64,000 bases of DNA from Hyphochytrium catenoides (GCA_900088475.1 FLMG01000941.1:397741-461740), one strand, 5' to 3'; positions 6,592 to 64,000 are shown, counted from the first letter of the stretch. A program made the numbers and translations. The notes: generated by a model from the sequence alone, not told the origin.

Positions 6592-6633
<42 letters not shown>

Positions 6634-6691
6634 CACGAGAAAGAGTGAGTGTGTGTCAGAGAGAGAAAGAGAGAAAGAGAGAGAGAGAGAG

Positions 6692-6739
<48 letters not shown>

Positions 6740-6765
6740 AAGAGAGAGACAAAGAGAGAGAGAGG
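6590..6765. repeat. (GA)n microsatellite
   Basis: Long GA dinucleotide run seen directly. Confidence 0.95.
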
Positions 6766-8205
6766 AGTCAGAAGCTGATCACTCCCTCAGCCCTCAGTTT
6801 TGGCCTGACCACTCGCTCTCACACTCTTCACTCTTTACCGGCATAATAATCCAGAATATCTTGCTCAGGTTCTAAATGAAAGCATTACATTGAGAATAGT
6901 ATAGTACTCCGGAGTAATATTGTTGTGCGACGTTGCGCGCTGTACAGCGTGTATGCGTTACCGTTAACAGTAGCGGTGGTCCCATTGCAAGGACTCAATT
7001 CGGCTCGGCAGAAACCATAGATCTATTCAGGGCCACCTTGTCTTCAAACCCCTAGTCTTTGAAATTCTCTATGTCTCAAGGAAAGGAAAGTGGTTCCTTA
7101 GACAGGTTGAATATATAATCTATGGATAAGACAGGTGGGACTCTGGTGTGGAAGGTCCATCATCATTCTCGGCTGTGCAGGTGCAAAAGCTCAAAGCTCT
7201 TTCGATAAGATCTTCATCATCCCTCATCAGAGATTTATTTATAAAGAGTGGCGCCAGGAGGTCAGCGGCCGCTCCGCTCATCAACAGCAGAGCTGAGAGG
7301 AAGAGACGGAAGGGGACCCTGCCTCGCTTCTCCCAGGAGCAGCTGGCAGCAGCAGCTGCTGAGAGGAAAGAGGAAAACCAAGCGTGAGAGAGAGGGAGAG
7401 ACTTCGTCGAGGAGGAACAGACAAGGTCCAGTCCTTCCTATTACCTAGTTCCTAGCGACTGCCTTTCTGGTTAAACCTTAGACCGATCGTACGGCTTCTT
7501 CTTCCTTCGCGGGCCCCCCCCCCACCCGCCCACCCGGCCAACCCTAACCTTCTCGTGCTGCCTGCTGCGGGCGCCGAACGAGGAGTCTGATCTTGCAGGT
7601 GGTGGGAGATCTCCTCACTAAATCCATGTGCTCCCTACCTGCTTGCCTATCTGATGCCCCCTTCTTCTTTACCCTCTTACGCGGCATCCCTAGCCTTTTC
7701 CCTTACACTACTACTGCTGCCCTCTGCGGACTCAGGATCGGACGCTGTAGCAGTCCTCCCTGCTGCTGCTGCTGTCTGGGAAATAAGTAACCCTTGCAGC
7801 CAGAGAGCATCTTTTCCGCGGCGTGTGGAGCAACCCGGCCGCCAGTCAACAACTGGATAATAGTTTCCGCTGACATAAAGCAAAGATTCTACTTTGAAGC
7901 TCGTTTTTGGGCCAAGGCTGTGGCGCCAGCATCACAGCTCAAGGCGGATCCAAAGGTTATGATTAGTCCTTGTTCCTTTTGTGATTTTCCTTAGTAGGGG
8001 AGAATTGCCAGCCTCGTGCCGTTCAACCGGTCTTTGCTCTCCATCCAAGCTCTCCGCAAGCAGCAACGCGCTCTCTTTGTTGCCGGTTGCGCAGTGTTTT
8101 CTATTCGGGTCTCATCGTTGCTTTGTCATCTCTCCTGCTGCCTGTTCGACCACCCTTCCCATCGCTCTGCTTCTCCCTTCGTGGCTGTTCTTGTCAGCAG
8201 GTATC

Positions 8206-9558: not shown

Positions 9559-10579
9559 CGGTGGTCTTTCTCTCCGTTCTCTCCCCCGGGCGAGTCACCT
9601 CTCACTCGTTTCTCCGTCTTCAATGGCTCATATCCACTATGGCACACCTTACTGTTCTGATTATCTTGTCCCTACCAAACCCTCCTACGCCTATGGTTCT
9701 TCCTTTCTCTGTCTCATCCTCTTCTCCTCGATCCCTCACTTCCTGCGTCTACTTTCCTGGTGTGACGCTCTGAATGTCATCCTCCTTAATCCTCTTTACC
9801 CTCTTTCTCGCTCTCTTTCTCTTCGTTTGGAGGATGACACACGATTAGCCTCCGGCTCCTGCGCTTCTTTCTCGTGGAGTCAGTAGGAGGATAGAGAGAT
9901 AGCCTGTACCACTTTACAACGTCTTTGATAATGGGAATAGGCTTTCCTTCCTCTCAACTAATGACCTCCCTTCACCAAGCTGTGCACCAGGATACGGCAC
10001 TACCCGCACCTCGACAAGTACTCCGGAGTAAGCGCCGGTCTCGGCCAAGGAATATAAGACTATCAGAGCCGGGGAAAAGAATCTAAATGCCCTTGCAACC
10101 TATTCAAAGAAGAGAACGTCTTTCTCAGTCATGGTCCTTTCATTGGGTCCAGCATCTTTCTTTAAACGTTGTCAGACCTCTGTCCACTAGCATCTCACTC
10201 AGCTCGATTCCACCACTGCTCTCTCTATCAGCAGCCCTTGCCTATAGTTCTATCGACCCTGTCCCTTCCTCTTCTTCCCTACCTAGTCAGCTTCATTCAC
10301 CACATACAGCAGATCTACTCTTCCTCTCTCTCTCTTCTCCCAGTCAATGCTCAGGACTCTCTTCTCTCTCTCTCTTGGTCCATCTGTTTCCCCGGGGGTC
10401 GATGTTCCTGGAGCCCAAGTCATAACAAAGCTAAGCAAAGCAAGCAGCTCCCAATTACGGTCCGTTACCGAATGAAAGATTCAGTAATGAAAAACACAGC
10501 TTTCTTTTCAGGGCCATTAAATACTAAGAGTGGGAGCAGCATGAAATGTTTCACTACGTCGTCCTGCAAAAAAAAGGTC

Positions 10580-10850
10580 TTTCCCTTCCCCTTCTGTTTC
10601 TCTCTGTCTCTTTTTCGCTCTCTCTCTCTCTCACACACACTCTTTCTCTCTCTTTTTCTCTCTTTCTCTTTCTCTCTCTCTCTCACACTCTTACTCTCTC
10701 TCTCACACTCTCTCTGCCCCTCCCTCCCTCCCCCTCTCTTCCATTTTTTGTCTCTCCAGTCTCTGTCTTCCGTGCCTTTCACCTCTCTCTCGCTCTCTCT
10801 TCACGCCAATAGCGCGCTGCTCCTCTTCTTCCTTCCTCTTCTCTTCGGTC
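10580..10850. repeat. (CT)n-rich low-complexity microsatellite
   Basis: CT dinucleotide/pyrimidine run seen directly. Confidence 0.9.
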
Positions 10851-16850: not shown

Positions 16851-17939
16851 ATGCCCGTGCTCCTCCCCCTTCAAACTAAAATTGAGGCCAGTCCAATGAC
16901 CCTCTCTGGCGTAAACCGCCGTCTTTATGGCGAAGAGGATCATACCTTCACAATTTCAAGAAGCGCTGCCGTCCATCGTAGCAGCGGCGTTGATGCTGTA
17001 GCTGCTGCGGCAGCAGTAGTGTCCACCGCCACCGTTGAGAATGGAACTTTAGATGTCTTAGAGGCCAGCTCATTGCTGCTCTCAATGTCCAAGCAAGCAC
17101 GAGTTGGACCTAAGAAGGAGAAGAAACAGTCAGTATCTCATCCAAAGCCTAGCCCAGTATCTGCTAAGAAAGGCAAGAAGAAGGCTCCACCCCGGCCTCC
17201 AGTTGACGATGAGCTGACTGACGATGAGGACATGGGTTTGGAAGAGCTCCAGCGAGCTTCACGCTTCCCTAATCTTGAGGTAGACACCAGCGAGTACGAA
17301 GATGACAAGGTGCGCCAGCGTACAACTATTTCTCCGCGCTTCGAAAAGACGACAGCTCGCCGGCCGCTGCAGAAACCCATCACTCTTGAAGAACTGAAGT
17401 TGCACTTTAACAAGCCAATAGTAGATGTTGCAAAAGAGTTCGGCGTGTGCATCACGCTTATGAAGAAAATTTGCAGAAAGAATGGTATCAAGCGGTGGCC
17501 TCATCGGCTGATCCGCAGTCTAGACAAGAGGATTCAGAACGCGGAGATCAGTCTGCAGACTGCCACGGGCTCAGAGCATCAACGCTGTCAGGAGCAATTG
17601 ATAATGTTGAAGAGGAAGCTCGAGGCGGTCTTTGAGAACCCGAACATCAAGATGAAGGAGACTGAATTAGACGCGCTAGAGTACCATCCCCTACCTTCTC
17701 CCAAAGGAGCACCTGCTAGGTTGCCTTCGACGCCAAGTGCCTCTACACCTAGTCCGTCTCCTACTCCAGCCGCCATGCCACCAGCGCCTCAACTCTCGCA
17801 AAGTGCATTGGCTGTCTCTCCAGGGACCACTGCGGCGGCGAACGTCCCGCTAGGAGCTGCTCAAGGTGGCCATTCAGTGTCTATATCATCCATTCTGTCT
17901 CCTGCTCCTATTTCCCCAGTGGTGAAGATAGACAACTAG
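16851..17939 (+). CDS. RWP-RK domain transcription factor
   Basis: ITLEELKLHFNKPIVDVAKEFGVCITLMKKICRKNGIKRWPHRLIRSL followed by a short coiled coil. Confidence 0.92.
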   Translation: MPVLLPLQTKIEASPMTLSGVNRRLYGEEDHTFTISRSAAVHRSSGVDAVAAAAAVVSTATVENGTLDVLEASSLLLSMSKQARVGPKKEKKQSVSHPKPSPVSAKKGKKKAPPRPPVDDELTDDEDMGLEELQRASRFPNLEVDTSEYEDDKVRQRTTISPRFEKTTARRPLQKPITLEELKLHFNKPIVDVAKEFGVCITLMKKICRKNGIKRWPHRLIRSLDKRIQNAEISLQTATGSEHQRCQEQLIMLKRKLEAVFENPNIKMKETELDALEYHPLPSPKGAPARLPSTPSASTPSPSPTPAAMPPAPQLSQSALAVSPGTTAAANVPLGAAQGGHSVSISSILSPAPISPVVKIDN

Positions 17940-25794: not shown

Positions 25795-26040
25795 AGGTGA
25801 GAGTGCGAGAAAGAGAGTTGTAGGAGATATAAGAGAGAGAAAGAGAGTGAAGAAAGAGAGGAAGAGAGTAGGAGACACAGAGAGAGAAAGAGAGAGAGAC
25901 AAAGAGACAGAGAGAGAGAGAGAGACAAAGAGACAGAGAGAGAGAGAGAGNNNNNNNNNNNNNNNNNNNNNNNNNNNNNNNNNNNNNNNNNNNNNNNNNN
26001 NNGAGAGAGAGAGAGAGACAGAGAGAGGGAGGAGAGAGGG
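25795..26040. repeat. (GA)n microsatellite containing an assembly gap (N run ~25951-26001)
   Basis: GA repeat flanking Ns. Confidence 0.95.
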
Positions 26041-28538: not shown

Positions 28539-29138
<600 letters not shown>

Positions 29139-48845: not shown

Positions 48846-50349
48846 GCTCCCTTATGCCTTTCCTTTCTTTTTTATTCTCCACTTTCCTTCCTGTCCTTCT
48901 TGTCTGACTTCTAGGAGATTGCAATAATATCTATCTAACCTCTTAACCTTCACTGAGATGCTTCTTGATCACATCCTGACATATGTACACAGTTCCTCCT
49001 GAGACGCCAACACTGGCTCGATTAGCTAGTCGAAGGCGACAGAGGCTACGTTTATATGCGAAGTAGAAAGTTCGTGCCACAGCCCCGCCGATTACAGGCT
49101 ACAATGAGTGCATCTCTGGGCATTGGAGATCCATGGGTGGAGTGGTTCCTCAAAGGATGCGAATTAGTCGCTGGCGCGAAGAAGAAACTGCAGGGTCCGC
49201 CCTTAGGATAGCATCCTTACAGTGACCCTGCACGAACGGAGGACCTCGAAGCTATTGCAACTTTTGATTGCCCGCTGGCTTTCACTTCCTGGCCTCTTGC
49301 TCGAGCTTCCTGACGCTCGCCTGAGGTGGAACGTCGTCCACCTATAGCACCACTTCAAGGCTAATCTTTGTCATTATCCCTCTCAGATCTTGAGTCCCTA
49401 CTTCCTCCCTCACAACCCTTGACTTATTGCCTAGTGATCCGCGGGTAAATCGCGAAGTCTAACTCCAGAAATGGAAATCTAGCTTTCGCGAGCAGGCTAA
49501 CAACATCCAACATACTAGATGGTAAGAGAGAGTAGGCCATGCGCTGGCGGTGATGATCTCAAAACTAAGATGAGAAGAAATGCGATGTGTTCGGGTTCTT
49601 TAGACTGGAAGCTCTGATCCCAGAGTGCATGCTGCCTCTCCTTAGGTGGTAAAGAGTTTAACTAGTCTGGGAGTTTATTCAGTTGCCCGCTGTCCCTTAA
49701 CATGATGGCGGCGCCGACTTAGGAGCTAACTTTGTCTCCTATCCACGGCGCTGCGAAGAGCTTGTCTCAGGCGGTACAGCGAAAGCTTTGGGTACGGGCC
49801 GCTAGTGTACCCTCCACCCGACCTGCCCAGCCGTGCGCTGCTCAAAAGCGGGCACGCAACTGCCTAGCCATTGTCTACAGATGTCTCCCCAGGGCATACC
49901 TTTCCATCTCCTTCCGTCACCTCTCTTTGCGGCCCTCTCTCCACGGCACCGTGGTAGTTGGCATAGGGGAAAGCGGGAGGAGGCCGCCCTTGACAATATC
50001 AGCCCCGCATTTCTGCTGACGGCAGCTCGTTGGCCGCGCCCTGCCTAAGGTCTAAGATAGCACGAGGACTGTTACAGGGTGGACCTTCTCCCTCATCTCA
50101 TTGTCCTTTGTCCTCTTCTCGCGTCCTGCTTGCTTCCCACTGTCAAAGGATCTATTCTAGGAACTTCTGTAACCTTCTCCTGGACTCCGTAACCCGAATC
50201 ATCTCCCTGTATCTTGTACAGTAGCTGTACCTTCGGCCGCTGGGGCAGCTAACGGCTAGCTCGGGGAGGGTAACCCCCTCTGGCATTTTCTTCACTTTGT
50301 ATCACGCCTCTTCGTGCCTTGCTTCTGTCTCTCTCGCTCCTGCTTTCGG

Positions 50350-50416
<67 letters not shown>

Positions 50417-50434
50417 CTCTCTCTCTCACACACA

Positions 50435-50468
<34 letters not shown>
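50350..50468. repeat. (CT)n/(CA)n compound microsatellite
   Basis: Seen directly. Confidence 0.95.
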
Positions 50469-50471
<3 letters not shown>

Positions 50472-50785
50472 CAGCTACCCGGTGGGCAGAGGAGAAGATC
50501 AAAGAGAGAAAGTGCAAACACCCAGAGACAAGAAGCGACAGAACCACCTGAAGGTAAGGATGAGTCAAGATGGAAAGAGACGCTTTCTATGAGGAGCGCT
50601 ACTGGGCCCGTTATATCTCTTCGCTCATCATCGTCCTTACCGGCAGGCTAAGAGGTGAAGCCCCAAATCGTTTCTCACTTCAGGCAGCACTAGAATAGCC
50701 CCTCGTCCGGAGAAATAAGCGCTCGCTCGACATCCACCTCCGGAGGCTCTCGTCTGCTTGAAAAGTCAAGAAGAGCTCTGGAGCC

Positions 50786-51951
50786 ATGTGTAAGGACGCC
50801 AGAGGCTCAACCTTCTTCAGCCTGAGGGAGTTTGAGCTTTCCCTCTCACCTTCACCCTCCTGCCCTCCTCTTATGCCTTACAGCTGGGGAGGAGCAGTTT
50901 GAGCGCCTGCTGGCCACCATCAACCAGATCTTCGTCTTCAAAATCCCTCCCCAAGTCTCAGCTACGGGCCACAGGTAAAGCTAACCGTCAATGCAATGAC
51001 CAACCAAGGATTTTTCCCAATCTCTATTTTCCACCGAGACACGCGGAGGACTTGCCCGCCAAAATCCGGTTTTGACGACTCTACCATTATCTCATCCTTT
51101 CTCTTCTCTCTTCCTTAATAGGGCTGCGGACTGGCCTCAGGAGCATAGCTGGGAGGGGATCTGTAAGATCTTCGGCCGCGGCGATGACGCGTTTATTCGT
51201 CTCGTAGACAGGAACTCCGGACAGCTCTTCGCTGAGGCCCCGATGCTGAAGGGAGGGCCGCCGGCAGTGATGAAAGGTTTGAGTTTGAATAGTAGTAGGA
51301 GGATACTCTCCATTTTACAAGGCCTTTTCTTCCCCTTTATCACGGAATACTGACATCTTGCGGGTTCCTGTGTTGATTGCAGTGACGGACAGCAGCAGGT
51401 ACTTTGTGCTCAGGATAGTTGACGGCGCCTCAGGTGATAGTCTATATCCTTCACTTCTCTGCCTTCTCTGTTGGGAGGACGTATTTCATAAGAGGAAAGA
51501 AATACTGAATAGAAGACAGATGTCTCATACCAATTCTTAGGGCGGCACGCTTTCATCGGAATTGGGTTCCAGCAGCGCAGCGATGCTTTTGACTTCAATG
51601 TGGCACTGGAGGACCATAAGGCTCAGCTGGAGAGGGAAAAGTCGGCCCAGGTGCAAGAGGCGACCAGCACGAAGGATTACTCTCTGAAAGAGGGGCAAAC
51701 CATCCACATTAAGCTCAACAGCGCGAAGAAGGTGCTATATACGCTGCTCGTACAACAGGTGAAACAGCACAGAGAAACCGACTAACAATCACTGTGAACC
51801 TGCAGAAGAAGGAGAAGGATGAATCTGGGGAGGATCACCGTCCAGCCGAAGCTCCAAACACGAGGTATTGGCGCACCAGTATCATCTCTTACTTACAAGT
51901 ACCTAATTCACAGTCTCGCCCTCTCTTAACAGTGGCTGGGTGACATTCTAG
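50786..51951 (+). CDS. NECAP: adaptin ear-binding coat-associated protein (NECAP), multi-exon
   Basis: IFVFKIPP...GHR|AADW, GQLFAEAP, VTDSSRYFVLRI, RHAFIGIGFQQRSDAFDFNVALEDH, KDYSLKEGQTIHIKL and C-terminal WVTF*. Confidence 0.93.
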
Positions 51952-53660
51952 TACTCGTAGGACAGAAGTCAGCCTAATGACCCACCGACATAGTCCGACA
52001 GCGAACCGTTAACTGGAAACGCTAATCATGTCAAGGAGCCCTTAACTTTTCCATAAGCGCTTCCTGTCATCCGTCTCTCCATGTGTGCGAAGCCGCTCTC
52101 ATCTAATGTTTCCCATTAGCAGCACTTGGGTCTATACATCATCTCAGTTGGCAGGTAGGACATCCCGTAGATGGCAACGGTCAGTGAGCCAAAGGGAGGG
52201 AGGCATCTTCTCCCGTTGCTACTACAAAGATGCAAGCTTCCACTGAGAGAGTGCCGTCTTCCTAGTACTGAAGTGCCGTGAGAACAAATTCCATGAATGA
52301 AAGCCACTCCGCTAAGCCGTTAGTGAATTGAGGAGACCTATATTCAAATGATTATAATGTTCTGAGGACGGAGAGGCAGTTCCCGAGGATGGACTCCTTT
52401 ATTCGCCACGAACAGATCCTGACTGTTAGAGACACAGCGCCTGAGTGGCCCGACATGTTTGATACCGTCGCAGGCAACAACTGGGAAGAATGGTGGGGCG
52501 GCAATACGCTTAAGCTGCCTATCCTCCTACTCCACTTGTCCAAGAGAACTAAGAGGTTCAGACAGCCACCGCTTCCGTTATAGTTGGCCCAATATAGAGT
52601 TCCCTTCTTTGCACGTCAGCCACTAAGGGCAGCAGGATTATGCACTTCAGCAAAAAGGAGCTTTTCTTGAGAAGCAATGCAAGTTCTATGTGATTGCAGT
52701 GCTTCTGGTGGCAGTCGTTTAGACACCATGATTAATGTGGCCAGAAATAAGCGGTATTGGGAGTGTACATCTATAGGACATTGTCATGATGTGAGGGTTA
52801 TCTTCCCCTATAATAGTTTCTATGTCAGTCAACCTTTCAACGCCCCAGCACGGTAAGTGATGCGGCTAGTAGGGCAGGCAGTAGGACTAAGAGAATCTCT
52901 TCACCACCAGAGCGATTGAACCCATCGCTTTACTGCAAGAGTTTTTACCAAAGCACTGGCTGCTGAAGGAGCAAAGAGTCTGAAGAATATCATGTCTCTC
53001 TGCGGTTTTAGCTTTCCTTTCTTCGACAGGACGCAAAGAAGCTACTTCTTCCGCTCTCCCTTATTTTCTCCTTATTTGGACTCCAGCTACAACTGGTGCT
53101 TTTACCCTTCTACTTTTGCCCTTCTCACTGACAGAGAGTATTTTCATGCAATCTCATGATGATGAGTACGACTAATGAATGAACTTTATTGGCAACTTAT
53201 CACGCTCAATACTCCTCCGGGTCTGCTTTATCCTCTGCTGGACTAACGACGTTTTGTAACTGGCTATCGAGAGACTTCATTTGCACTGCGGAAGAGTCCC
53301 CATATGTGGAACAGGATGAGACATGTGTCTTCTGACATTAAAATTGTGAGTCGGCCTCCCTCCAGCAGGAAGATAGATGTATTGGTAGACCATGCCTTCT
53401 TTCCCAGCTGAACTACTCACAGCCATAGTGGCAACAAAGGCCTGAAAAAGAGACAAAGGGATTACGGAAAGCCAAACGAGACCGCAAATGGCTGCTAAGT
53501 AGCGTGGATACTTCAGCAACTATTACTGGTGGTGGAGTTAGATCACTCTTCTTCTCTCTTTCGCTTCTGTTTACCCCCCTTTCTTCTCTTTCCCGCGGGT
53601 GACCGGCCACCCTTGCCCTAAGGCATGGAAGCTTGCTTATCGCTGATGGAAGGACCAGGC

Positions 53661-53800
53661 TGTTGGAGTCTGAGGGCACAGATATGTGGAGTGTAAGCTG
53701 GCGAGCTTAGCTACCCAAGTTCCAAATCCAATTTCCCAGTAGAAGCCGAGATATGAAGCAAAAGATTGTCCGTGTTTGTATCTATGGCTTATGCTCAAGG
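53661..53800 (+). mobile_element. partial LTR, family A
   Basis: Starts tgttggagtctgagggcacag, homologous to the LTRs at 56814, 57116 and 58044. Confidence 0.75.
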
Positions 53801-54322
53801 TTAGTGCTAAATGCTCGTTGTCATCATCAGTATAAACTCTGTCCACACCTAGCTCTCAGTGAGGTAGACGTTACCGAAATAAAAATTTGTTATGGGTGAA
53901 GAGAGATGAGAGGAGACTTTCATGAACTTGTGAGGAGATATGAAGTCACAAAGAAAGATGCAGTAGTAGTCACGAGAAAGTATTGAGCTTGAAAGTGACA
54001 AAGGTAACACGAGTAAGAAGACCTCGTTAAGCGCGACAACAGCCTCTCTTCGATAAGAGTGTGTTCTTCAGAGATCAGAAAAGCGAAACTAAGAATCTCC
54101 CCTCCTTATACTTAAAACATGCAGGGGGAAGAAGAACAAGTCTTTCCTAACACAAAGTTCTACCCTAAAAACGCGTCCTGTAGAGGAGACAAGCAAAAGG
54201 AGACCAAAGACGGAGCATAGAGGGACGGGGGACAGGAGAGAACCCGTCCTCTCCTGAAAGCTTCTAATGCACTATGACTGCTGACTTAATATATTTTGAA
54301 CTTTGGGTTATTATATATGGGA

Positions 54323-55330
54323 TGTTGAAGACACTGCTATTTAGGTCAGTGGACTACTAATATGGTCAGATTGAGTATGGAGAGCTTATGGGACCCTCTT
54401 TTCCTAGTTATGATCTTGTCTCATTGCTCTAGTTAGTACTGTGTCTTGTATTATCTACATGACCCAGTAATTATTTTCTCCCTTCCTATAATGACTTACT
54501 TACTGTGACAATAGCCTACTTGCTATAACAACTCTGAAACACTTTTTTGTGTGTCTTCTTCTTGCTGAAAGGTAGTGTCTCGAACTGAGAGCTTGACAGC
54601 TTCGGCTCTCAACAACCTCACCGCGGGTCCAGACTCCTCAAGTGTCCGTCTGCCTCCGCCTTGTCCTCCCCGGAAGGTAGACTTTGTATTATTGCATGCG
54701 CAACTGGATGAAACAATTCCGAGTTGGAGAGGAAGGTTCTCGGTACTGAGGTGCTGGTAACGCCTTTGTGAGAACATGTCGGCACGCAGTCATCTTCTTG
54801 GTTGTTGGACAGAGTTGCAAATCCAAGACTTTGCGATCACCTGATCCCTAACCACAGAGTGCTTGACATCAATATATTTCGATTTTGGTCTCGGCGTCTC
54901 GCAGATTGTTATTGTGCTCTTGTTATCTTGATGCGCGAGGATGGGTCTACTCAGTGGCCACTGAAGCTCCTGTAAGAAATAGGAGATGTGTTCTGCATGT
55001 TTGGCTTCGGTCCAAAGTGCGATCGATACACACTGCTTCAGTGATTAAGGAAGCCACTATGTCTTGCTTCTTGGCCTTCCAACTGAAAGCACCGGTCCCT
55101 AGAAGAAGAGTAAGAAAGCAGCCAGAGGTGGATTATCTGTCGTGAAGATCATTCGCCCAATCTGCATCTGCGAAGAAGAGTTGTAGGGTGCTGAACTCTG
55201 ATTGTTCTCTGGGGTTGATGTTCCTTCTAAACATAAGAAGTAATCGCAGTTCCTTTCAGATATCTCGGTATTCGATATATAGTTCGTCATATGCTGGCTA
55301 ATCGATTGTACCAGGCCTGTGCGTTTTCGC
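54323..55330 (-). mobile_element. decayed Ty1/copia 3' end: RT-end/RNase H fragment, PPT and LTR (family B, 54323-54614)
   Basis: Minus-strand ADADWAND, WKAKKQ..VA and ADMFSQ-like remnants. LTR bounded by TGTTG...CAACA. Inverted homologue of 58920-59580. Confidence 0.75.
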
Positions 55331-55637
55331 AGACAGAGCACCACTAGGAGCCCGTTACGCATGGGGATGGACGGAGTTGTGCTTACAAAGTGCTGACAAA
55401 TCCCTTACTACAAACGGGTAATATCGGAAGCTATTTTGGGGTCTTCTCGGCTCCCCAACACAGTGTCACCACACTTCGTTGATACTTTCAGTGAACCTCC
55501 AGGAACAGTGGTCGCGCGCTGTTTTAAATCTCTGCCCCACAACCCGCAGTCTCTTCAGTTTATCCACCCCGCGTAGGGTAAAAAAGGTCGCCCTTTCCGC
55601 AGCGACAGGAGCTCATCATCAGAGGAGACAAGTGGAA

Positions 55638-55850
55638 CTAGTTTGTTGATCTTCTTGGATCATTCTTCTTCCAGTTCTTCTTGCTCGTCTCTGTGAAATC
55701 CTTACAGCAGGTGAGCGGGTCTCTGGCCTCAGTCAGCAGTATCTGACTCTCATCCTCGATGTGGACGAGCAAATCTATCCCATCCAGGTAACTTCGTACC
55801 CGGCTTGACCAAATAGTAGGATACTGGTCCTTGCTGCGTATACAGCGATG
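55638..55850 (-). mobile_element. copia Gag N-terminal remnant
   Basis: YPTIWSSRVRSYLDGIDLLVHIE...WKKND resembles copia Gag N-termini. Confidence 0.5.
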
Positions 55851-56129
55851 TTGTTCGAATGAACTCCTCCTTCCTTTGATGCTCCCGCGCTCAGTTGAGC
55901 AGAGAAGCAGCAGTGACCTACAGCGAGTGTGGGGCCAACATAACCTGATAAATTTTAGCAGAGGTAGATAGTTGTTGATGATGTCTGAAGCTCTCTCTAG
56001 ATGAACATATAACAAAGGGACTTGATGATGGTAATTAATCTGCCAATTGACTGAATGATTTCTATTCCTTAAAAGAAAGAAGAGGTCAGGGAATTCTCCT
56101 CACATCTCTCTTCAAGGGGTCCGGGGAGG

Positions 56130-56300
56130 GTGGCAAGACGACCATTGTGTCGTCTTTCGTAGATGACCGGCTAATTTTTGCCCCTAGCACTGACCGTGCA
56201 AATCAAGTTGAAGGCCTTCTCAAGAGCAGATTTGCTGTGAAGGACTTAGGAGAAATCCAACACTCCCTCCCTGGGAGTTGAGGTTAGTCGGGATTGAAAG
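56130..56300 (+). mobile_element. copia reverse transcriptase fragment
   Basis: SFVDDRLIFA...LLKSRFAVKDLGEI. Confidence 0.75.
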
Positions 56301-56314
56301 AATCGGAAGAAGAT

Positions 56315-56800
56315 ATTGATGAATGGGGTTCGGAGACATATATATATATATGAGTTCCTGCTCGGGTTATAAGCCCGAAAGGGGTAGTCTCTAGATTATG
56401 GGACCCTCTTGGATATAGGACCCTGAATACTACTGAGATGTATTCCTAATAGAGAGTACCTGTTCTATCCTAATAAGCCATAGATAGCATTAGAGTCCAC
56501 TTCTTCCTTCCTCTCCGCTTCTACTTGGAGTTTGGGACTGTAACTTGGACAGTTGGCCTGGTACATCTTAGTCTTAATAAATTAAGACTCAGATAGTCCA
56601 TACTTCAACACCTCCCCGCAGCTCTAAGTGTCCGTAGGTAGAGAGATTGAGGGGTTCGATTCTGAGAGAGAAGATGATCATATGGTGGGTATGTTGGGCA
56701 CTATTCCTAGCTGAGGGAGTAAAGCTTGGAACAGTGGAATCGGTAGTGCCTTGGTGAGCTATCAGCGGTCATGTCCTTAAATGGACAGTAGTGATCCTTA
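56315..56800 (-). mobile_element. copia RNase H end, PPT and LTR (LTR ~56315-56610) on the minus strand
   Basis: MTAD..LTKALP remnant, then gagctgcggggagg|tgttgaag. The LTR shares motifs with family A (agtagaagc.gaga, tatctatggctta). Confidence 0.7.
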
Positions 56801-56813
56801 GGACATAGCGGTA

Positions 56814-57437
56814 TGTTTGGAGTCTGAGGGCATAGCTAAGTGGACTACAAGCTGGCAAGCTTGACTACCCAAGTTTCAGCTCCAACTCCCAATAGAAGCC
56901 GAGATATGAAGCAAACGAAATGTCCCTGTTTATATCTATGGCTTATGGTCAGTACCCTGGAATATCTTCAAGACTGACTGTTGTAGACAGGGATTTCTCT
57001 ATACCTGAATATCTTAGGGTTTATGAGACATAGTCGGCATAGTCAGAATAGCTCTAGATTATGTTGAGAGTTCAGCTTCGACCCTTCACAATAGGGAGAT
57101 CGAGCTGCGGGGAGGTGTTGGAGTCTGAGGGCACAGCTATGTGGACTACAAGCTGGCAAGCTTGACTACCCAAGTTTCAGCTCTATCTCCTAGTAGAAGC
57201 CGAGATAGGAAGCAAACGAAATGTCCCTCTTTATATCTATGGCTTATGGTCAGTACCCCGGAATACCTTCAGGACTGACTGTCTAGACAGGGATTTCTCT
57301 ATGACTGAATATCTTAGGGTTTATTAGGAATAGTTGGCATAGTCAGAATAGTTCTAGATCATGAGACCCCAGTTGGGCTTACAAGTAGAGCACTCTCATC
57401 TCAATACAGTGTCCAATCATCCCCTACAAATCCAACA
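56814..57437 (+). mobile_element. two adjacent family-A LTRs: truncated 56814-57061; extended copy 57062-57437 with an internal PPT before 57116
   Basis: Near-identical ~250-320 bp repeats with TGTTGG...TCCAACA termini. Confidence 0.85.
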
Positions 57438-57489
57438 AGATCATCATTCTGTCTGTCGACGACTTACTTTTGATAGAAGAGTCGACAGA

Positions 57490-58043
57490 TCGTGACAGGA
57501 CAGCAAAGACCATAACCCTGTCATAGCCAAAGTACATCAGTAGTATTCTATTAGAGACCAACATGGGTGACTGCCATCCAATCCGTTGCCGGTGACCCCG
57601 AAGTCATACCTGCCGAAGGGACGAAACATTCCAGTTGCCCCGGAGACTCGAGAGCTTCTGAGCCAGATACCATACCGGGAGGCCGTAGGGTGGGTGTCTT
57701 ATGTACCTTATGGTCACCACCCGGCCCGACATTTGTTATGCGGTACAGTCCTTAAGCCAGCACGTCAACGCCAAGAGTCGTGCACTGGGAAGATGTAAAG
57801 CGGATTTTCAGGTACTTGAAGGGCACAGTGGACCTAGGTTTGACTCTTGGGGGAAAGAGTATGCCATGCCTGAAAGCGTTTGCGGATGCCGACTAAGCCA
57901 ATGACCCTTGGGATCGGAAGTCCATTCCAGGGTACTACTTCACGTTGGGTGAAGGCGCCTTCGTATGGAAGTCGCTGAAGCAGCACCTCACAGCTTCTTC
58001 TTCGACGGAGGCGGAATGCATCTCTCTTTGGGCGGCCACCGAG
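57490..58043 (+). mobile_element. decayed copia RT C-terminus and RNase H
   Basis: QIPYREAVG, YLMVTTRPDICYAVQSLSQH, ADAD*AND..DRKS, WKSLKQHLTASSSTEAE. Confidence 0.85.
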
Positions 58044-58384
58044 TATTGGAGTCTGAGGGCACAGCTATTATGTGGACTACAAGCTGGCAAGCTTAACTAC
58101 CCATTTCAGCTCTAAACTCCCAGTAGAAGCCGAGATATGAAGCAAACGAAATGTCCCTCTTTATATCTATGGCTTATGGTCAGTACCCCGGAATACCTTC
58201 AGGACTGACTATTCTAGACAGGGATATCTCTATAGCTCCATATCTTAGGGTTTATTTGGAATAGTTGGCATAGTCAGAATAGCTCTAGATTATGGGACCC
58301 CAGTTGGGCTTATAAGTAGAGCACTCTCATCTAATGACACTGTCCAATCATCCCATATAATCCAACAGGTTATGGTCCCACGCG
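58044..58384 (+). mobile_element. family-A 5' LTR (58044-58367) followed by a half-tRNA-iMet-type PBS (GGTTATGGTCCCA)
   Basis: ...TCCAACA|GGTTATGGTCCC resembles the Drosophila copia/Hemivirus PBS GGTTATGGGCCC. Confidence 0.8.
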
Positions 58385-58399
58385 TCTTCCAGGACTCGG

Positions 58400-58845
58400 A
58401 AACTTGTTCTGGGGCAAGATGTTTGTCGGGCCCTTTCCGATAAAACGGGTGATTTCGGCTACTGCATACCGTCTAACCGTACCGGTTACGTACAAACAGT
58501 CACACCCTGTCTTTTATGTTTCGCATTTGCAGGAACATCATTCTCCTATGGAGTCACAGGCAAAACACGATAGGCCTCCGCCAGACATAGTCGATGGACA
58601 ATGAGGACGACGTCGAGGTAGAAGCTATACTAGATACACGTTGTTCAGAGGACGTCGTCAATACCTGCTTAAGTGGAAGGGTTACCCGGATCACGATGCT
58701 TTTTGGGAACCAGAGGCTATGGCTACTCATGCGGACGATCTTCTCACAGAGTTTCGACAAAACGGAGAACAATCCCTTCCTCCTGCTGTTTCCCGCCGAT
58801 CCAGAAGAGAACGTGGGAAGCTTACTTAAAAGGGTAGAGAGGTAA
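58400..58845 (+). mobile_element. Ty3/gypsy chromovirus remnant: integrase GPY/F region, chromodomain and PPT
   Basis: FVGPFPIKRVISATAYRL..P....HPVFYVSHL; VEVEAILD..; RGRRQYLLKWKGYPDHDAFWEPE; purine tract aaaagggtagagagg. Confidence 0.85.
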
Positions 58846-58919
58846 GGAGAAACCTCCTCCTTACGCAAGCACGGTGTCCTCTAAGACTCTCATTGATGAT
58901 TAATGCTAGATTTTCTTCC

Positions 58920-59580
58920 TCGTCCATCACACTCGATTCCCTTACAGAAGCAGAGTGTATCTCACTTTGGACCGGAGCCAAACATGCAGAAAAACAAACA
59001 CATCTCTTATTTCTTACAGGAGCTTCAGTGTTGCAGACCCCTCCTCGCACATCAAGATAACATGAGCACAACAATAACAGTCTGCGAGATGCCCAGACAA
59101 AAACGAAATGTTTTATGTCAAGCACTGTGTAGTTAGGGATCAGGTCAATCGCAAAGTCTTGGAAATGCAACACTGTCCACCAAGAAGATGACTACCGACA
59201 TTCTTACGAAGGGGTTACCAGCACCTCAGTTCCGAGAACTTCTTCCTCCAGAACTCGGGATTGTCCTCTCCACTTGCTTGCGTAAGACAAGTCTACCTTC
59301 CGGGAAGGGCAAGGCGGAGGCCGATGGACACCTGACAAGTCTGGACCTGCGGGAGGTGGTGAGAGCTGAAGCTGACAAAGCTTTGAAAATAGCTCTCATT
59401 TCCAGACTCTATCTTATAAGAAGGAGAAGACACAAAACAAAGTGTTTCAGGGTTCTAGTAATAACTAGGCTTTTATCACAAGGCAAGTCATCATGGGACG
59501 TGAAGAGACAGTAACTGGGTCATGTAGATTTGACAAGACACAGTTACTGTTACAACAAGACCCAGTTACTGATTAGAACA
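58920..59580 (+). mobile_element. decayed copia RNase H, PPT and family-B LTR
   Basis: TEAECISLW, VKHCVVRDQV, MTTDILTKGLPAPQF, then cctgcgggagg|tggtgagagctgaagctgac. Confidence 0.8.
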
Positions 59581-59779
59581 ACCTAGATCTTAGATGTTAA
59601 CTTGGGGTATTTGGGAAATTGCAAAGTGAGGTCGGAATGAAGTGGGGGCCGGACCAGAGGAGGCGCCTTACTGGCATCCGAGGACTTGGATGCCTCACAG
59701 CCACTCATTTAGATGGTGGTCTATCGGCATACAGAATACTAGCAGCTAACTGTGCTAACTTGTAATGGCGATATCTCAG

Positions 59780-60615
59780 GAACTAGAAAGAGTTAGAAGC
59801 TGAGATTTGGATAGTATAATGACCGTCATCTATACTACCGGATCCTCATCCAATAGATTGAACCGGTTAACCTACAGACAGCATACAACAGAACCGTTCA
59901 AGCAGTAGGCGGAGGAGGAGCCGTCCGCCTACATCTTCACGACTCATCCAAAACCTTCATTCTCGAGAATGTCCTTCACGCACCTGGCTTTAAGAAGCAT
60001 CTTCTCTCAATTGGACAAGAACTTAAAAAGGGATATCATGTACTTTTCACAGAAGACGGTGGCGTCTACTACCTAGATCAAAAGAACGTACCACATCTAG
60101 CTACAAGCCAAGATGCAATATCTCTCGGCACACGAGTCGGTACGTTGTTCTACTCAAAGGAACAAGTCCGAAGACCTCAATAATAGGTACACACCACGTC
60201 GGGAACAAGCTGGATGAGCCACCAATACACAACCCCAACCAAAGTCAGTTACCATTTGGCATCGCCGCCTGGGGCAGCACCTCAACATTCCAGACCTCAG
60301 GAAACTAGCCAAAGTTGCTGAAGGCATTCAGATCAACCATGAGGACGCTCAGCTCCGTATGCATCTAGGCAAACTCACACGCCGTAAGTTCCCCCAAAAA
60401 AGCGACTCGCAGAGCTTCAAGAACCCTGCAGGAGCTAGTTCACTCCGATGTGGGAGTTATCAATACCCTTAGCCTAGGAGGACCCCGCTATTACGTTGTC
60501 TTGGTAGATGATCACACCCGGCGGACATTTCTCTACCTGATGAAATCCAAAGATGAAGTAATTACTCACCTGGACACGTTTGTGCGACTAGCGAACGACA
60601 AACTGGATGCACAAT
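59780..60615 (+). mobile_element. decayed copia protease / GAG-pre-integrase / integrase core
   Basis: LENVLHAPGFKKHLLSIGQ, WHRRLG.HL, ELVHSDV...SLGGPRYYVVLVDDHTRRTFLYLMKSKDEV. Confidence 0.85.
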
Positions 60616-60857
60616 GATGAATTTTACAGAGATGGGTGGCAATGCCTGAAGCTTCTGTATCAGCACAATCTAGATGGAACGATAACAAAGGGACTTGGTA
60701 TTGATGTGTGATGGAGATTCTTCTGAATGATCACTCAGTCCGGAGAGCCTGGTCTGGACTCGAGATCTTTTGCTCGGCCCAGCTTCCCTCATCATCTCTC
60801 TCTCCTCTGCTGCTCCTGTGTTCTTCTGGAAATTCTTCTCACATCCCTCTTTCCCAT

Positions 60858-61290
60858 AACACAGGTGTACCCGTAACGTCTATGTCCCTGAGAGCTAGGT
60901 GTGTATAGAGAGTGACTACTGTACTACTGACAACGAACATAGTAGCACTCAACCAATCCCCCTCATACCTAGCTTCTCTGGATCATCAGTGGTGAGGGAC
61001 CAATTAATTCATCTAATTGTCGGTCTCACTCACTCTCTCCCCCTCAGACGAAGCTAGGTGGGTAGTAGTGGCAAGAGTACTGACACTAGGAGGGAGCACT
61101 CCAAGGTGAGGACGCAGTGTCCGAAAGAGAGGAGCAGGTAAAGGCTTGGTGAGGCAATCGGCTACCAAAGCTGTAGAGGGAGTATAGACCAGCATAATTT
61201 TCCCATTGGCGACCTTCTCTTCTTGCAGGACACAGTGCTTGACATCTAGATTCTTTGACTTTGGTCGTGAAGAGGAGCAGAGGACAATTG
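60858..61290 (-). mobile_element. LTR end plus minus-strand copia RNase H fragment; duplicated at 63567-63993
   Basis: KSKNLDVKHCVLQE...YTPSTALVADCLTKPLP; a near-identical second copy lies at the window end. Confidence 0.85.
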
Positions 61291-62635
61291 GATGGGCAGC
61301 TGGTTGGAGAAGCCAAGCTCGCCAAGGAACACACTGAAGTGCTCTGCGACCTGGCTTGCGGACCAAAGAGAGACGCACTCCACTTCCGCCACGTTCACTG
61401 GGAGGCTGTCAAACGTATCTTCACCTACCTGAAGGCCACCAAGAAGACTACTCCTTGTGTCTAGGGGGAGATACCCCTATTCAACTCTCTGTCCAGGCTG
61501 ATGCTGATTGGGCTAGTGACCCAGCTGACCATAAAATTCGAAGCGATCGAGGAAGGGAATACTTCTCAGAAGCCATGAAGGAGTACTGTAAAACACACAC
61601 GTGGAATAGTACATGAACTCACAGCCTAAAGAGCGCAGTTTTGTGGAATCTGCTCGCAGGATGCTCCACGTTGCAAAACTTCCCTTATCGTTTTGGGGAG
61701 AAGCCCTTAATTCCAGCAGCTCACCTTGGAAACATGTACCCCACCACCTCAGCACTTAACAAAGACAACACACCCTATAAAATGTGGGAGGGTAAAAAAC
61801 CTGACTTGAGTCATCTGCGTGTCTTCGGTTGTCAAGCTTATGGTCTCATCCCTGACCAGGAACGGACCAGAAGGATGCTAAGGCTAAGTACTATGTCTTT
61901 GCGGGTTATGCAGTTCATTGTTTAAATTTAAAGCATATAGCTTATATGGTCCAGAGACAACAAAGAGATCATTGAAAGCGTGATGTCACCATCAACGAGA
62001 ACCAGAACAGATACATCGAAACATCACTTCCACCCGAGGATGTTGACACATTCTCTTAGGTACTAAATGAGGCCCACGACGCGACTCCAGCTCCAGTAGT
62101 AGAGATCCAAAAACCCAGCTAATAAATGAGTCCCGGCATCGAAGTAACAATTGACATATCTGATCCAGCCAACCTTGACAACACCGAGGGTGAGAGGTTT
62201 CGATGTACGGAAGACGACACTGAAGTTGAAGAAGAGATCCTACCTCCACGAAATGCGTTTCATACACTCTCGTCCACTAGCGAGAAATCTACACTGGATA
62301 CACTACCCCGGCCCTCGTAGAATTCAATCCAAGGTAGATTAGGCCGCCAAGTGTTAATCCCCGGAGGAGAACGCTCTCACTCTCCACCTATTGCCATTCA
62401 ACCTTCTCGTATCCCACTGCTACGAAACCGCCTACAACAGGAAGATTCCATCTCTCGTGCGGTAAACAACACTGAGACAACATTTGACCCGCGAACCATC
62501 ACAGACGCACTAAGTGGACTTCACACCGAAGAATGGAACACTGCTATAGCTGTTGAATGTTCACCTTCGACCTTTTATAATAGGGAGTTTGAGCTGGGGG
62601 GAGGTGTTGAAGTCTGAGGGGGAGATTAGTCAAGA

Positions 62636-62716
62636 GTACGTTTGGTGTATGGTGCATACTGGTTAGGGTGTCGGCATCAAAGACAGAGGTCCTGGGTTCG
62701 AATCCCGGAGCGTACA
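62636..62716 (+). ncRNA. tRNA-like Pol III gene inside the LTR (intact acceptor stem and T arm, aberrant anticodon arm)
   Basis: Acceptor stem GTACGTT/AGCGTAC plus discriminator A; A-box-like TGGTGTATGGT; variable loop AGGTC; T arm CTGGG-TTCGAAT-CCCGG (B box GGTTCGAATCC); TTTT at 62721-62724. Confidence 0.75.
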
Positions 62717-62792
62717 AAACTTTTCTCCGGTATATGTAGACACCCCCCAATATTAATTCAAAGTGCTCACCATCCAATGATAAAATCTAACA

Positions 62793-62811
62793 TGGTGTAC
62801 GCTCCGGGATT
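62793..62811 (+). promoter_or_regulatory. primer-binding site complementary to the 3' end (+CCA) of the adjacent tRNA-like RNA
   Basis: TGGTGTACGCTCCGGGATT is the reverse complement of AATCCCGGAGCGTACA (62701-62716) + CCA and lies immediately after ...AACA. Confidence 0.8.
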
Positions 62812-63487
62812 TAACTCGGGCAATACATATCCAACAATAGCTAGAGAGTTAGCCCTCGATGGAACACCATGATGTCGGTGAGCTTGTTGAACGACCACCA
62901 GACGCCAATGTGATCGGGTGCAAATGGGTTTTCCCCTCCAAGTATAACAGCGATGGCAGTCTCGACCGCTCTAAAGCTCGTCTGGTAGCCAAGGATACAA
63001 CCAGAAGTTTGGAGTTTATTCCAGTGAAGTTTTTTCACCTGTCGTCAGTTATGAGGCAGTGCGATGTCTTCTGTCATTGGCAGCCACATATGATCTCGGG
63101 ATCCACCACGTCGACATTAAAAAGCCTTTCTCCATGGCGATCTGGAAGAGACGATATAATATAAGCGTCAGCCTCCTGGCTTCGAGCAACCTGGAGCGAA
63201 AAAGAACATGGTCTGCAAGCTCAAGCGGAGTATTTATGGTCTCAAACAAAGTCCCAACCAATGGAATAAAGTCCTCGACGGATATTTGCATGATCATAAT
63301 TTAAACCCAGTCTCTGCGAGCCATGCGTCTATATTCGCAATTCCAACGACAATTCCAAACCAACCATCATCTCCGCCCGCCTTCGTTGATGACACCCTGA
63401 TACTTGCTCCAGACACCACCAAAGTCACTCAAGTCGAGCAGCTGCTCGCGAATTGATGAACTTTACAGAGCTGGGTGGCAATGCCTG

Positions 63488-63662
63488 TGTTGAGAGCAGA
63501 AGCTGACAAGAGCTCTAAAAGGCTCACAGTTCCAGACTCTATCTGACAAGAGGGAGAAGACACAAAACACAGGTGTACCCGTAACGTCTATGTCCCTGAG
63601 AGCTAGGTGTGTATACAGGGTGACTACTGTACTACTGACAACGAACATAGTAGCACTCAACA
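63488..63662 (+). mobile_element. short LTR related to family B
   Basis: TGTTGAGAGC...CACTCAACA termini; the 5' part is homologous to the LTRs at 59357 and 54614. Confidence 0.75.
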
Positions 63663-64000
63663 CTCCTCCTCATACCTAGCTTCTCTGGACATCAGTGGTG
63701 AGGGTCGAATTAACTCACCTAATTGTCGGTCTCCCTCACTCTCTCCCCCTCAGACGAAGCTAGGTGGGTAGTAGTGGCAAGAGTACTGACACTAGGAGGG
63801 AGCACTCCAAGGTGAGGACGCAGTGTTCGAAAGAGAGGAGCAGGTAAAGGCTTGGTGATGCAATCGGCTACCATAGCTGTAGAGGGAGTATAGACCAGCT
63901 TAATTTTCCCATTGGCGACCTTCTCTTGCAGGACACAGTACTTGACATCTAAAGTCTTTGACTTTGGTCGTGAAGAGGAGCAGAGGACAATTGCGCTTTG

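What the first reader, a model, noticed from the sequence alone, without database searches (positions are those of the whole stretch)
62605..62811. LTR retroelement that appears to encode its own primer tRNA
Seen in sequence: the inner LTR (62605-62792) contains an 81-nt tRNA-like unit (62636-62716) with a 7-bp acceptor stem, canonical T arm/B box, A-box-like sequence and a TTTT terminator 4 nt downstream. Directly after the LTR end (...TCTAACA) is TGGTGTACGCTCCGGGATT, the exact complement of this unit's last 16 nt plus a non-templated CCA; the genomic unit ends ...GTACA-AAAC, without CCA. Established: LTR elements prime minus-strand synthesis with a host tRNA annealed to an ~18-nt TGG-starting PBS, and copying of the primer stops around m1A58; the match here ends at that position. 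The anticodon arm is aberrant (mismatched stem, ~18-nt loop), while the parts needed for Pol III transcription, RNase P/Z trimming and CCA addition are intact. Inference: the element carries a dedicated primer RNA gene, freeing it from host tRNA and possibly from tRNA-fragment silencing. This differs from Tf1 fold-back self-priming and from the 5S-carrying Cassandra LTRs; I do not know of a described equivalent.
Basis: partly seen in the sequence, partly recalled or inferred. Interest (0 to 1): 0.93.

Follow-up and report, generated by a model that had tools for sequence, protein, structure and literature searches.

The report
tRNA-bearing LTR matching its primer site
A 286-base retrotransposon remnant in a stramenopile genome carries a tRNA-like gene in its repeat and, beside the repeat, a primer site matching that tRNA-like gene; the one published survey of such elements found no such match, but one copy cannot exclude ordinary priming by a host tRNA.

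Summary
An 81-nt tRNA-like unit lies at 62636-62716, with a T-run 4 nt downstream. A polypurine tract and TGTTG head come before it. After the ...AACA tail comes TGG plus the exact complement of the unit's last 16 nt, ending at A58.

Two corrections:
1. The inserted entity is 62551-62836 (286 bp). It has a 5-bp target duplication (ATAGC) and sits inside a dead Ty1/copia RT gene. It holds one LTR, with the PPT segment on its left and the PBS segment on its right, so it is not a 5' LTR-PBS-body element.
2. LTR elements with tRNA-derived LTR modules are already described (Helenus/TRIMp3, Kojima 2024). That paper looked for module-PBS complementarity and found none.

This is best filed as a Helenus-like element in a new host lineage, with a PBS that matches its own module. 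That makes it a new variant of a known kind.

Whether the module supplies the primer, or the LTR simply holds a copy of the host tRNA that primes the family, cannot be decided. The window holds one copy, the source genome is not in any searchable collection, and no host tRNA set is available. My estimate for a self-encoded primer is about 0.3.

The parts
62546..62550 (.). Left copy of the 5-bp target-site duplication (ATAGC).
   Evidence: Removing 62551-62841 restores the copia RT frame with the W..AI..EL spacing.
62551..62604 (+). 54-nt segment that starts with the LTR-head-like TGTTGAATG and ends in the polypurine tract (62591-62604). It is derived from the 3' untranslated end of a copia internal region.
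   Evidence: 62551-62620 is 86% identical to 57062-57131, the PPT segment in front of LTR copy B. The motif GGGGAGG|TGTTG occurs 3 times in the window against 0.37 expected. One of these lies downstream of a copia pol C-terminus on the minus strand.
62605..62792 (+). 188-bp LTR (TGTTG...AACA) containing the tRNA-like module.
   Evidence: The 16-nt head is shared with the 321-bp LTR family at 57117-57437 and 58044-58367. With right ends anchored, the last 60 nt align to that family's tail; 3 of 2000 shuffles score as well.
62636..62716 (+). tRNA-Pro(AGG)-like pseudo-tRNA module. A-box-like sequence at 62643-62654 and B box at 62695-62705.
   Evidence: ARAGORN. Rfam tRNA at 27.7 bits, below the gathering score of 29. 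On its own it folds with the acceptor and T arms intact, but its stability is not unusual (z = -1.5).
62717..62724 (+). 3' trailer AAAC followed by TTTT, a candidate Pol III terminator. No CCA is encoded.
   Evidence: Read directly.
62793..62811 (+). Primer-binding site: TGG plus the complement of module positions 58-73.
   Evidence: Extension beyond A58 is not significant (p=0.24).
62812..62836 (+). 25-nt segment that ends in a second LTR-tail-like motif (...ATCCAACA). This is the right end of the integrated unit.
   Evidence: With right ends anchored it resembles the tail of the 321-bp LTR family; 4 of 2000 shuffles score as well.
62837..62841 (.). Right copy of the target-site duplication (ATAGC).
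61356..63456 (+). Degenerate Ty1/copia pol fragment (integrase SH3-like region to RT) that received the insertion.
   Evidence: Pfam: SH3_retrovirus at 61641-61922; RVT_2 at 62859-63161 and 63208-63453. ORF list.

Best explanation
The locus is one copy of a short non-coding LTR retroelement of the Helenus/TRIMp3 kind, dependent on a Ty1/copia partner. It integrated into a dead copia RT gene with a 5-bp duplication.

Its 188-bp LTR carries a tRNA-Pro(AGG)-like pseudo-tRNA with Pol III boxes and a T-run. The 19 nt after the LTR are a true PBS written from a CCA-tailed tRNA whose last 16 nt equal the module's.

The most likely reason for the match is that the LTR module is a captured copy of the tRNA species that primes this family. 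That species is the tRNA most concentrated in the particle and annealed to the RNA. Minus-strand synthesis would then be primed by CCA-tailed molecules of that sequence.

The host tRNA is the default source of these primers. Transcripts of LTR copies would be a second source if they are made and processed.

Shown: the anatomy, the target duplication, the PBS match and its limits, and kinship of the termini and PPT with copia-type LTRs.
Inferred: transcription, processing, CCA addition, which molecule primes, and how a one-LTR permuted unit arose.
For: - tRNA-like module.
- Exact 16-nt complement plus TGG, ending at A58; 0.01 matches expected by chance.
- PPT and head shared with two other LTR junctions.
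- Tail homology.
- TSD and restored RT frame: with Pfam RVT_2 on the flank.
- Helenus elements have this design (tRNA-derived LTR module, PBS, PPT, 5-bp TSD, copia partners in fungi), and solo LTRs with TSDs are common: PMC10886601.
- The module keeps a fully paired acceptor stem and a perfect T arm, which fits recent descent from a real tRNA. A host tRNA with the same 3' end is therefore plausible.
Against: - Kojima found no module-PBS complementarity in any Helenus family, so a shared identity is not the rule.
- If module and primer were independent, a match would be expected in only a few per cent of cases.
- A related LTR in the window (58044-58367) is followed by GGTTATGG..., which looks like an initiator-tRNA anticodon-type PBS. 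This PBS therefore differs from that of its nearest visible relatives.
- From memory, the module's acceptor stem and A73 are unlike the usual eukaryotic tRNA-Pro. I did not test this.
- The 3' 20-mer is absent from 241 million metagenome contigs and from GTDB genomes.
- Only one copy was seen and no second LTR.
Confidence: 0.5

Rival explanations
1. Self-encoded primer. Pol III transcribes the LTR module, RNase P and RNase Z trim it, and CCA is added. This tRNA-like RNA, not a host tRNA, anneals to the PBS and primes minus-strand synthesis. Each cycle rewrites the PBS from it.
For: - The PBS equals the module's 3' end plus CCA, and the match stops at A58.
- The parts needed for transcription and end-processing are intact (A and B boxes, 7-bp acceptor stem, T arm, T-run), while the anticodon region is aberrant.
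- A T-run directly after the module suits a small-RNA gene better than a promoter that drives the whole element.
- This PBS differs from the initiator-type PBS-like sequence next to the related LTR at 58367.
- No tRNA with this 3' 20-mer exists in two very large collections.
Against: - There is no expression data.
- Only one copy is available, so covariation cannot be tested.
- The host tRNA set is unknown.
- The module scores just below the tRNA threshold and may be a young copy of a host tRNA with the same 3' end. In that case the host tRNA would prime equally well.
- More than 200 Helenus families show no such link (PMC10886601).
Confidence: 0.3
2. The PBS and PPT are fossils inside a larger LTR. 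On this reading 62551-62836 is a solo LTR, or a 54-nt PPT segment plus a 3' LTR. Its ends moved outward, or its middle was replaced by an R-U5-PBS segment from another tRNA-led element through template switching. The PBS-like site is no longer used, and the inverted repeat is a relic or an RNA stem.
For: - The target duplication flanks 62551-62836, not 62605-62792.
- The outer ends form a better inverted pair (TGTTGAATGT / ACATATCCAACA) than the inner ends do.
- The outer tail resembles the tail of the 321-bp LTR family.
- The left boundary at the start of the 54-nt segment recurs at 57062.
- Folded as one RNA, 62636-62836 pairs the module's 3' half with the PBS.
Against: - The inner tail aligns to the related LTR tail over 60 nt, at least as well as the outer tail does.
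- A fossil would be expected to have drifted, yet the 19 nt are perfect.
- This reading explains the boundaries but not why the PBS matches the module.
Confidence: 0.12
3. Tf1-like self-priming in cis. The element's own RNA folds back so that the module's 3' end pairs with the PBS. A cut after A73 then provides the primer end without any free tRNA.
For: - A 16-bp intramolecular helix is predicted when the region is folded as one RNA.
- Self-priming is established for Tf1 and its relatives.
Against: - TGG next to the match has no partner in the genomic copy, where AAA follows A73. This points to a CCA-tailed molecule.
- In Tf1 the complementary bases are the first bases of the transcript; here they are internal.
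- The host pol is Ty1/copia-type, whereas Tf1 and its relatives are Ty3/gypsy-type (from my own knowledge).
Confidence: 0.05
4. The inverted repeat arose by chance or by DNA-level inverted duplication and has no link to priming.
For: None beyond the fact that only one copy exists.
Against: - 0.01 matches are expected by chance.
- The repeat stops exactly at the discriminator base and is followed by TGG, not by the complement of the genomic trailer.
- It sits directly after an ...AACA LTR tail.
Confidence: 0.02

Closest known systems
Helenus (TRIMp3) non-autonomous LTR retrotransposons, Kojima 2024, PMC10886601
   Same: - A tRNA-derived sequence with A and B boxes lies inside a short LTR.
- A PBS and a PPT are present.
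- There is no coding capacity.
- It makes a 5-bp TSD and has copia-type partners, as in fungal Helenus.
- Solo LTRs with TSDs are common in that family.
   Different: - Here the PBS is complementary to the LTR's own tRNA-like 3' end plus CCA. That paper states this was sought and not found.
- The host is a stramenopile, a lineage not listed there.
- This copy has one LTR with the PPT and PBS on either side of it, rather than LTR-PBS...PPT-LTR.
Cassandra TRIMs (5S rRNA module in LTRs; tandem arrays), PMC7215508
   Same: - A Pol III small-RNA module lies in the LTR of a miniature LTR element.
- In its tandem arrays each LTR is flanked by a PPT on one side and a PBS on the other.
   Different: - The module here is tRNA-like, not 5S; no 5S match was found.
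- The Cassandra PBS is the ordinary initiator-tRNA type and is unrelated to its module.
Tf1/Tf2-type self-priming LTR retrotransposons
   Same: A stretch upstream in the LTR region is complementary to the PBS, so no host tRNA would be needed.
   Different: - Tf1 uses the first 11 nt of its transcript and an RNase H cut. It has no tRNA-like fold and no CCA.
- Here TGG implies a CCA-tailed molecule.
- The host pol is Ty1/copia-type (RVT_2); Tf1 belongs to Ty3/gypsy (from my own knowledge).
tRNA-derived SINEs (SINE2)
   Same: It has a pseudo-tRNA head with A and B boxes. Kojima proposes that a SINE inserted into an LTR gave rise to Helenus.
   Different: - This unit has TG...CA ends, a PPT, a PBS and a fixed 5-bp TSD, which is LTR-type integration.
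- It lacks a LINE-type tail and a variable TSD.
Retroviral tRNA-Pro primer sites (for example murine leukaemia virus)
   Same: - The PBS is TGG-initiated and about 18 nt long.
- It shares its T-stem part (CCGGGAT) with tRNA-Pro-type primer sites.
- The match ends near m1A58.
   Different: - The acceptor-stem part of this PBS differs from the usual tRNA-Pro (from memory, not tested).
- Retroviruses do not carry the tRNA.

Membership tests
Helenus / TRIMp3 | The LTR contains a tRNA-derived sequence with conserved A and B boxes. | tested here: met
   ARAGORN. Rfam tRNA at 27.7 bits, full length. B box exact.
Helenus / TRIMp3 | Two LTRs flank a short internal region that starts with a PBS and ends with a PPT. 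| tested here: not met
   The window holds only one copy of the LTR body. The PPT lies left of it and the PBS right of it, inside one 286-bp insertion. The parent may still have the standard form.
Helenus / TRIMp3 | The PBS lies directly after the LTR tail and the PPT directly before the LTR head. | tested here: met
Helenus / TRIMp3 | It makes a 5-bp target-site duplication (the fungal and plant type). | tested here: met
   ATAGC is present on both sides, and the RT frame is restored on excision.
Helenus / TRIMp3 | It is a repeated family with several copies in the genome. | not testable with these tools
   The source genome is in none of the collections.
Canonical tRNA gene | It reaches the Rfam gathering score and has a 7-nt anticodon loop. 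| tested here: not met
   27.7 bits against 29. It has an 8-nt loop with a 4-base 'anticodon' and an extra arm. Allowing an intron changes nothing.
Tf1-type self-priming element | The PBS is complementary to the first bases of the transcript, with no CCA involved. | tested here: inconclusive
   TGG has no partner in the genomic copy, which argues against this. The transcript start is unknown.
Cassandra | A 5S rRNA-derived module lies in the LTR. | tested here: not met
   No 5S match in the Rfam scans.
tRNA-derived SINE | It is mobilised by a LINE, so it has a 3' tail or LINE-like end, a TSD of variable length, and no PBS or PPT. | tested here: not met
   It has TG...CA ends, a PPT, a PBS and a 5-bp TSD.

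The most novel reading that the evidence does not exclude
A lineage of tRNA-module-bearing LTR elements (Helenus-like) in a stramenopile has switched to priming reverse transcription with the CCA-tailed transcript of its own LTR-borne pseudo-tRNA. Every LTR copy, including solo LTRs, would then be a primer gene, and the element would no longer depend on a host tRNA.
Probability: 0.3. Interest if true: 0.85.

Novelty: new variant of a known kind. Interest (0 to 1): 0.6.

Why it matters
All known LTR retroelements and retroviruses either borrow a host tRNA or tRNA fragment as primer, or fold back on themselves as Tf1 does. An element that carries the gene for its own tRNA-like primer would be a third solution.

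It would also give the tRNA modules of Helenus-type elements a function beyond a Pol III promoter. The paper that described Helenus considered that idea and set it aside for lack of complementarity.

The case is directly testable. The module has diagnostic bases, such as its odd anticodon and extra arm, which would mark CCA-tailed reads and the RNA attached to strong-stop cDNA.

Even on the ordinary reading, this extends Helenus-like elements to stramenopiles. It would also be a first case in which the LTR module and the primer share one tRNA identity, which points to capture of the primer tRNA during reverse transcription.

Tried and rejected
- **Intron-containing true tRNA.** ARAGORN with introns allowed returns the same odd model. 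The Rfam alignment needs 22 nt where 11 are expected. I rejected it as a canonical gene.
- **PBS match continuing into the T loop and T stem.** The RNA fold suggests a 24-bp helix. At the DNA level an anchored extension test gives p=0.24, so I dropped the idea.
- **A second example in the 321-bp LTR family** (TGG after ...TCTAGATTA at 58289). Copy B reads TGA there, and the homologous stretch lies inside a 3' LTR downstream of pol and PPT on the minus strand. It is not a PBS.
- **Reading the LTR as 62605-62836 by homology of the outer tail.** This is not settled. Both the inner and the outer tails resemble the related tail.
- **Looking for other copies or a matching tRNA.**
  - The plus-strand ORF over the unit found nothing.
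  - The minus-strand ORF hit only unrelated repetitive proteins.
  - The tRNA 3' 20-mer gave 0 hits in metagenomes and in GTDB genomes.
  - A 16-mer in viral contigs gave 14 chance hits with no tRNA.
  - The PBS 18-mer gave 32 hits. Most share flanking sequence as if within one conserved bacterial gene, and none overlaps a tRNA call or shows an LTR-type junction.
  - The plasmid collection gave no match.
- **Identifying the genome.** An exact look-up of one ORF failed. The calmodulin look-up returned three contigs of other organisms, 84-89% identical in the coding part only.

Full report
**The observation.**
- ARAGORN finds one tRNA-like gene in the 64 kb, at 62636-62716 on the plus strand. 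It reports tRNA-?(Pro|Pro) with a four-base 'anticodon' aggg.
- Its model has a 7-bp acceptor stem with one G-U pair and a 5-bp T stem with loop TTCGAAT. It also has a short D arm, a weak 4-bp anticodon stem with an 8-nt loop, and a long extra arm.
- Rfam's tRNA model was silent under default filters. When only 93 nt are searched it aligns end to end at 27.7 bits, just under the gathering score of 29, and needs 22 nt where the anticodon loop region normally has 11. The unit is therefore tRNA-derived but not a canonical tRNA gene.
- The B box is exact, and an A-box-like stretch lies at 62643-62654.
- AAAC and then TTTT follow the discriminator base. No CCA is encoded.
- Directly after ...TCTAACA (62792) comes TGG plus the perfect reverse complement of 62701-62716. 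With up to three mismatches this 19-mer matches only itself and the unit's antisense strand, against 0.01 expected by chance.
- By the Rfam alignment the match runs from A58 to the discriminator A73.
- The repeat stops exactly at the end of the mature tRNA body. What follows is the complement of CCA, not of the genomic trailer. That marks a sequence copied from a processed, CCA-tailed RNA, not a DNA-level inverted duplication.

**The real boundaries.** The flanks are one degenerate Ty1/copia pol gene.
- Upstream lies an integrase SH3-like region. Downstream lie two RVT_2 pieces.
- The left flank reads ...EEWNTAIA and the right flank RELALDGT....
- In a script I removed 62551-62841 to check the frame only; I searched nothing with the joined sequence. 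This restores the W..AI..EL spacing that I remember from the N-terminal side of copia-type RTs.
- The insertion is therefore 62551-62836 (286 bp). It starts TGTTGAATG, ends ATCCAACA, and is flanked by ATAGC on both sides.
- Inside it the order is: a 54-nt segment ending in the polypurine tract, the 188-bp LTR, the 19-nt PBS, and 25 nt ending in a second LTR-tail-like motif.
- The PPT and PBS thus sit on either side of a single LTR. That is the arrangement of a tandem-array LTR or a one-LTR circle, not of a 5' LTR followed by an element body.

**Kinship with other LTRs in the window.**
- The 54-nt segment plus the first 16 nt of the LTR are 86% identical to 57062-57131. There the same segment precedes LTR copy B of a 321-bp family. 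Its copies are at 56817-57061 (lacking the last 76 nt), 57117-57437 and 58044-58367, with a fragment at 53661-53797.
- GGGGAGG|TGTTG occurs three times in the window against 0.37 expected.
- One of these lies on the minus strand just downstream of what reads, by eye, as a copia pol C-terminus. It leads into a roughly 328-bp LTR related to that family. The tract is thus a working-type PPT of a copia clade.
- With right ends anchored, the last 60 nt of the 188-bp LTR align to the tail of the 321-bp family (3 of 2000 shuffles score as well). The outer 44 nt also resemble that tail, through their last 16 nt or so (4 of 2000).
- The unit therefore has two head-like starts and two tail-like ends.
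- Copy C of the related family is followed by GGTTATGGTCCC. From memory this resembles the initiator-tRNA anticodon-type PBS of Ty5 and copia, so the PBS here is not the one its visible relatives seem to use.

**How a permuted one-LTR unit with a target duplication might arise.** I cannot settle this from one copy. Four candidates remain:
- A solo LTR of an element whose LTR ends had moved outward, leaving the old PPT and PBS inside.
- Integration of a one-LTR circle or tandem-array monomer, opened at the CAACA|TGTTG junction-like palindrome that the two outer ends would form.
- An LTR of the 321-bp kind whose middle was replaced by an R-U5-PBS segment of a tRNA-led element through template switching.
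- A microhomology deletion between TGTTGAA at the 5' LTR head and the same 7-mer at the start of the 54-nt segment.

In every version, the junction of LTR tail and PBS comes from an element whose LTR carried this module and whose PBS matched it.

**Other copies and the host tRNA.**
- The body of the LTR is unique in the window.
- The source is a stramenopile. A mitochondrial carrier ORF has its best hits in oomycetes at only 55-58% identity.
- The genome itself is in none of the collections.
- Protein-level searches with ORFs across the unit found nothing real.
- The module's 3' 20-mer is absent from the metagenome contigs and the GTDB genomes.
- The PBS 18-mer gave 32 hits. None overlaps a tRNA call or shows an LTR-type junction, and most share flanking sequence as if within one conserved bacterial gene.

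**What is known.** Kojima (2024, PMC10886601) described Helenus.
- Helenus elements are miniature LTR elements whose LTRs hold a tRNA-derived sequence with conserved A and B boxes, plus a PBS and a PPT.
- They make 5-bp duplications, have copia partners in fungi, and leave many solo LTRs. They are grouped with Cassandra and Ajax as TRIMp3.
- The same paper asks whether the module could be the primer. It reports no complementarity between module and PBS in any family, and concludes that the module does not contribute to initiation.
- It lists no stramenopile.
- I found no later paper reporting such complementarity.

**Mechanism.** The shown facts fit two readings that overlap.
- *Ordinary reading (0.5).* The LTR holds a captured copy of the tRNA species that primes the family. 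The primer tRNA is the one most concentrated in particles and annealed to the RNA, so capture by template switching is biased towards it. The trailer and T-run fit a gene or a primary transcript as the source. The host tRNA primes, and LTR transcripts could add to the pool.
In its favour:
  - The parts needed for Pol III transcription and end-processing are preserved while the anticodon region is aberrant.
  - A T-run right after the module suits a small-RNA gene better than a promoter for the whole element.
  - The PBS differs from that of visible relatives.
  - From memory only, the acceptor stem and A73 are unusual for a eukaryotic tRNA-Pro.
- *Tf1-like cis priming (0.05).* It is disfavoured because TGG has no partner in the genomic copy. 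However, the region folded as one RNA does pair the module's 3' half with the PBS.
- *Extension past A58.* A suggested extension of the match beyond A58 is not significant.

**Verdict.** This is a real and well-formed feature. It is Helenus-like in design, sits in a new host lineage, and has a module-PBS match not seen in the described families. I rate it a new variant of a known kind, with interest 0.6. The self-primer claim is open and directly testable.

Noticed in passing
window 51000-64000: This stretch is a graveyard of nested, degenerate Ty1/copia fragments on both strands, plus what reads by eye as a Ty3/gypsy integrase and chromodomain fragment. G+C falls to about 0.47 from about 0.51 in the gene-rich part.
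   Followed up: partly
window 56817-57437: An LTR copy lacking its last 76 nt is joined directly to the 54-nt PPT segment and then to a complete LTR of the same 321-bp family (91% identical). No PBS lies between them and no target duplication is visible. The start of the 54-nt segment is a breakpoint here too, as at 62551.
   Followed up: partly
window 58368-58379: LTR copy C ends ...ATCCAACA and is followed by GGTTATGGTCCC. From memory this resembles the initiator-tRNA anticodon-type primer site of Ty5 and copia. A sequence that reads by eye as a gypsy integrase C-terminus begins about 20-50 nt further on.
   Followed up: no
window 60855-61290 and 63563-63993: A direct repeat of at least 436 bp (95% identical) runs to the window end. 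By eye it covers a copia pol C-terminal part on the minus strand and the sequence downstream of it. The two copies bracket the plus-strand copia fragment that holds the finding, so this is a segmental duplication or a recombination product.
   Followed up: partly
window 54438-55042 and 58944-59544: An inverted repeat of about 600 bp at 77% identity. It may be LTRs or ends of another element.
   Followed up: no
window 6597-6779, 10571-10786, 25820-25955, 50280-50499: Long GA/CT-rich low-complexity arrays. The one near 25950 runs into a stretch of N, which is an assembly gap.
   Followed up: no
window 28542-28988 (-): An intronless calmodulin gene. Exactly the same 149-aa protein is encoded on three Logan contigs of other organisms, whose coding DNA is only 84-89% identical and whose flanks do not match.
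   Followed up: yes
window 2303-3379 (+): A mitochondrial carrier ORF whose best relatives are oomycete proteins at only 55-58% identity, followed by other stramenopiles. The source is therefore a stramenopile with no close relative in the protein collection.
   Followed up: yes
window 16851-17939 (+): An ORF of 362 aa containing an RWP-RK-like motif, judged by eye. No exact product is on record in the collection.
   Followed up: partly
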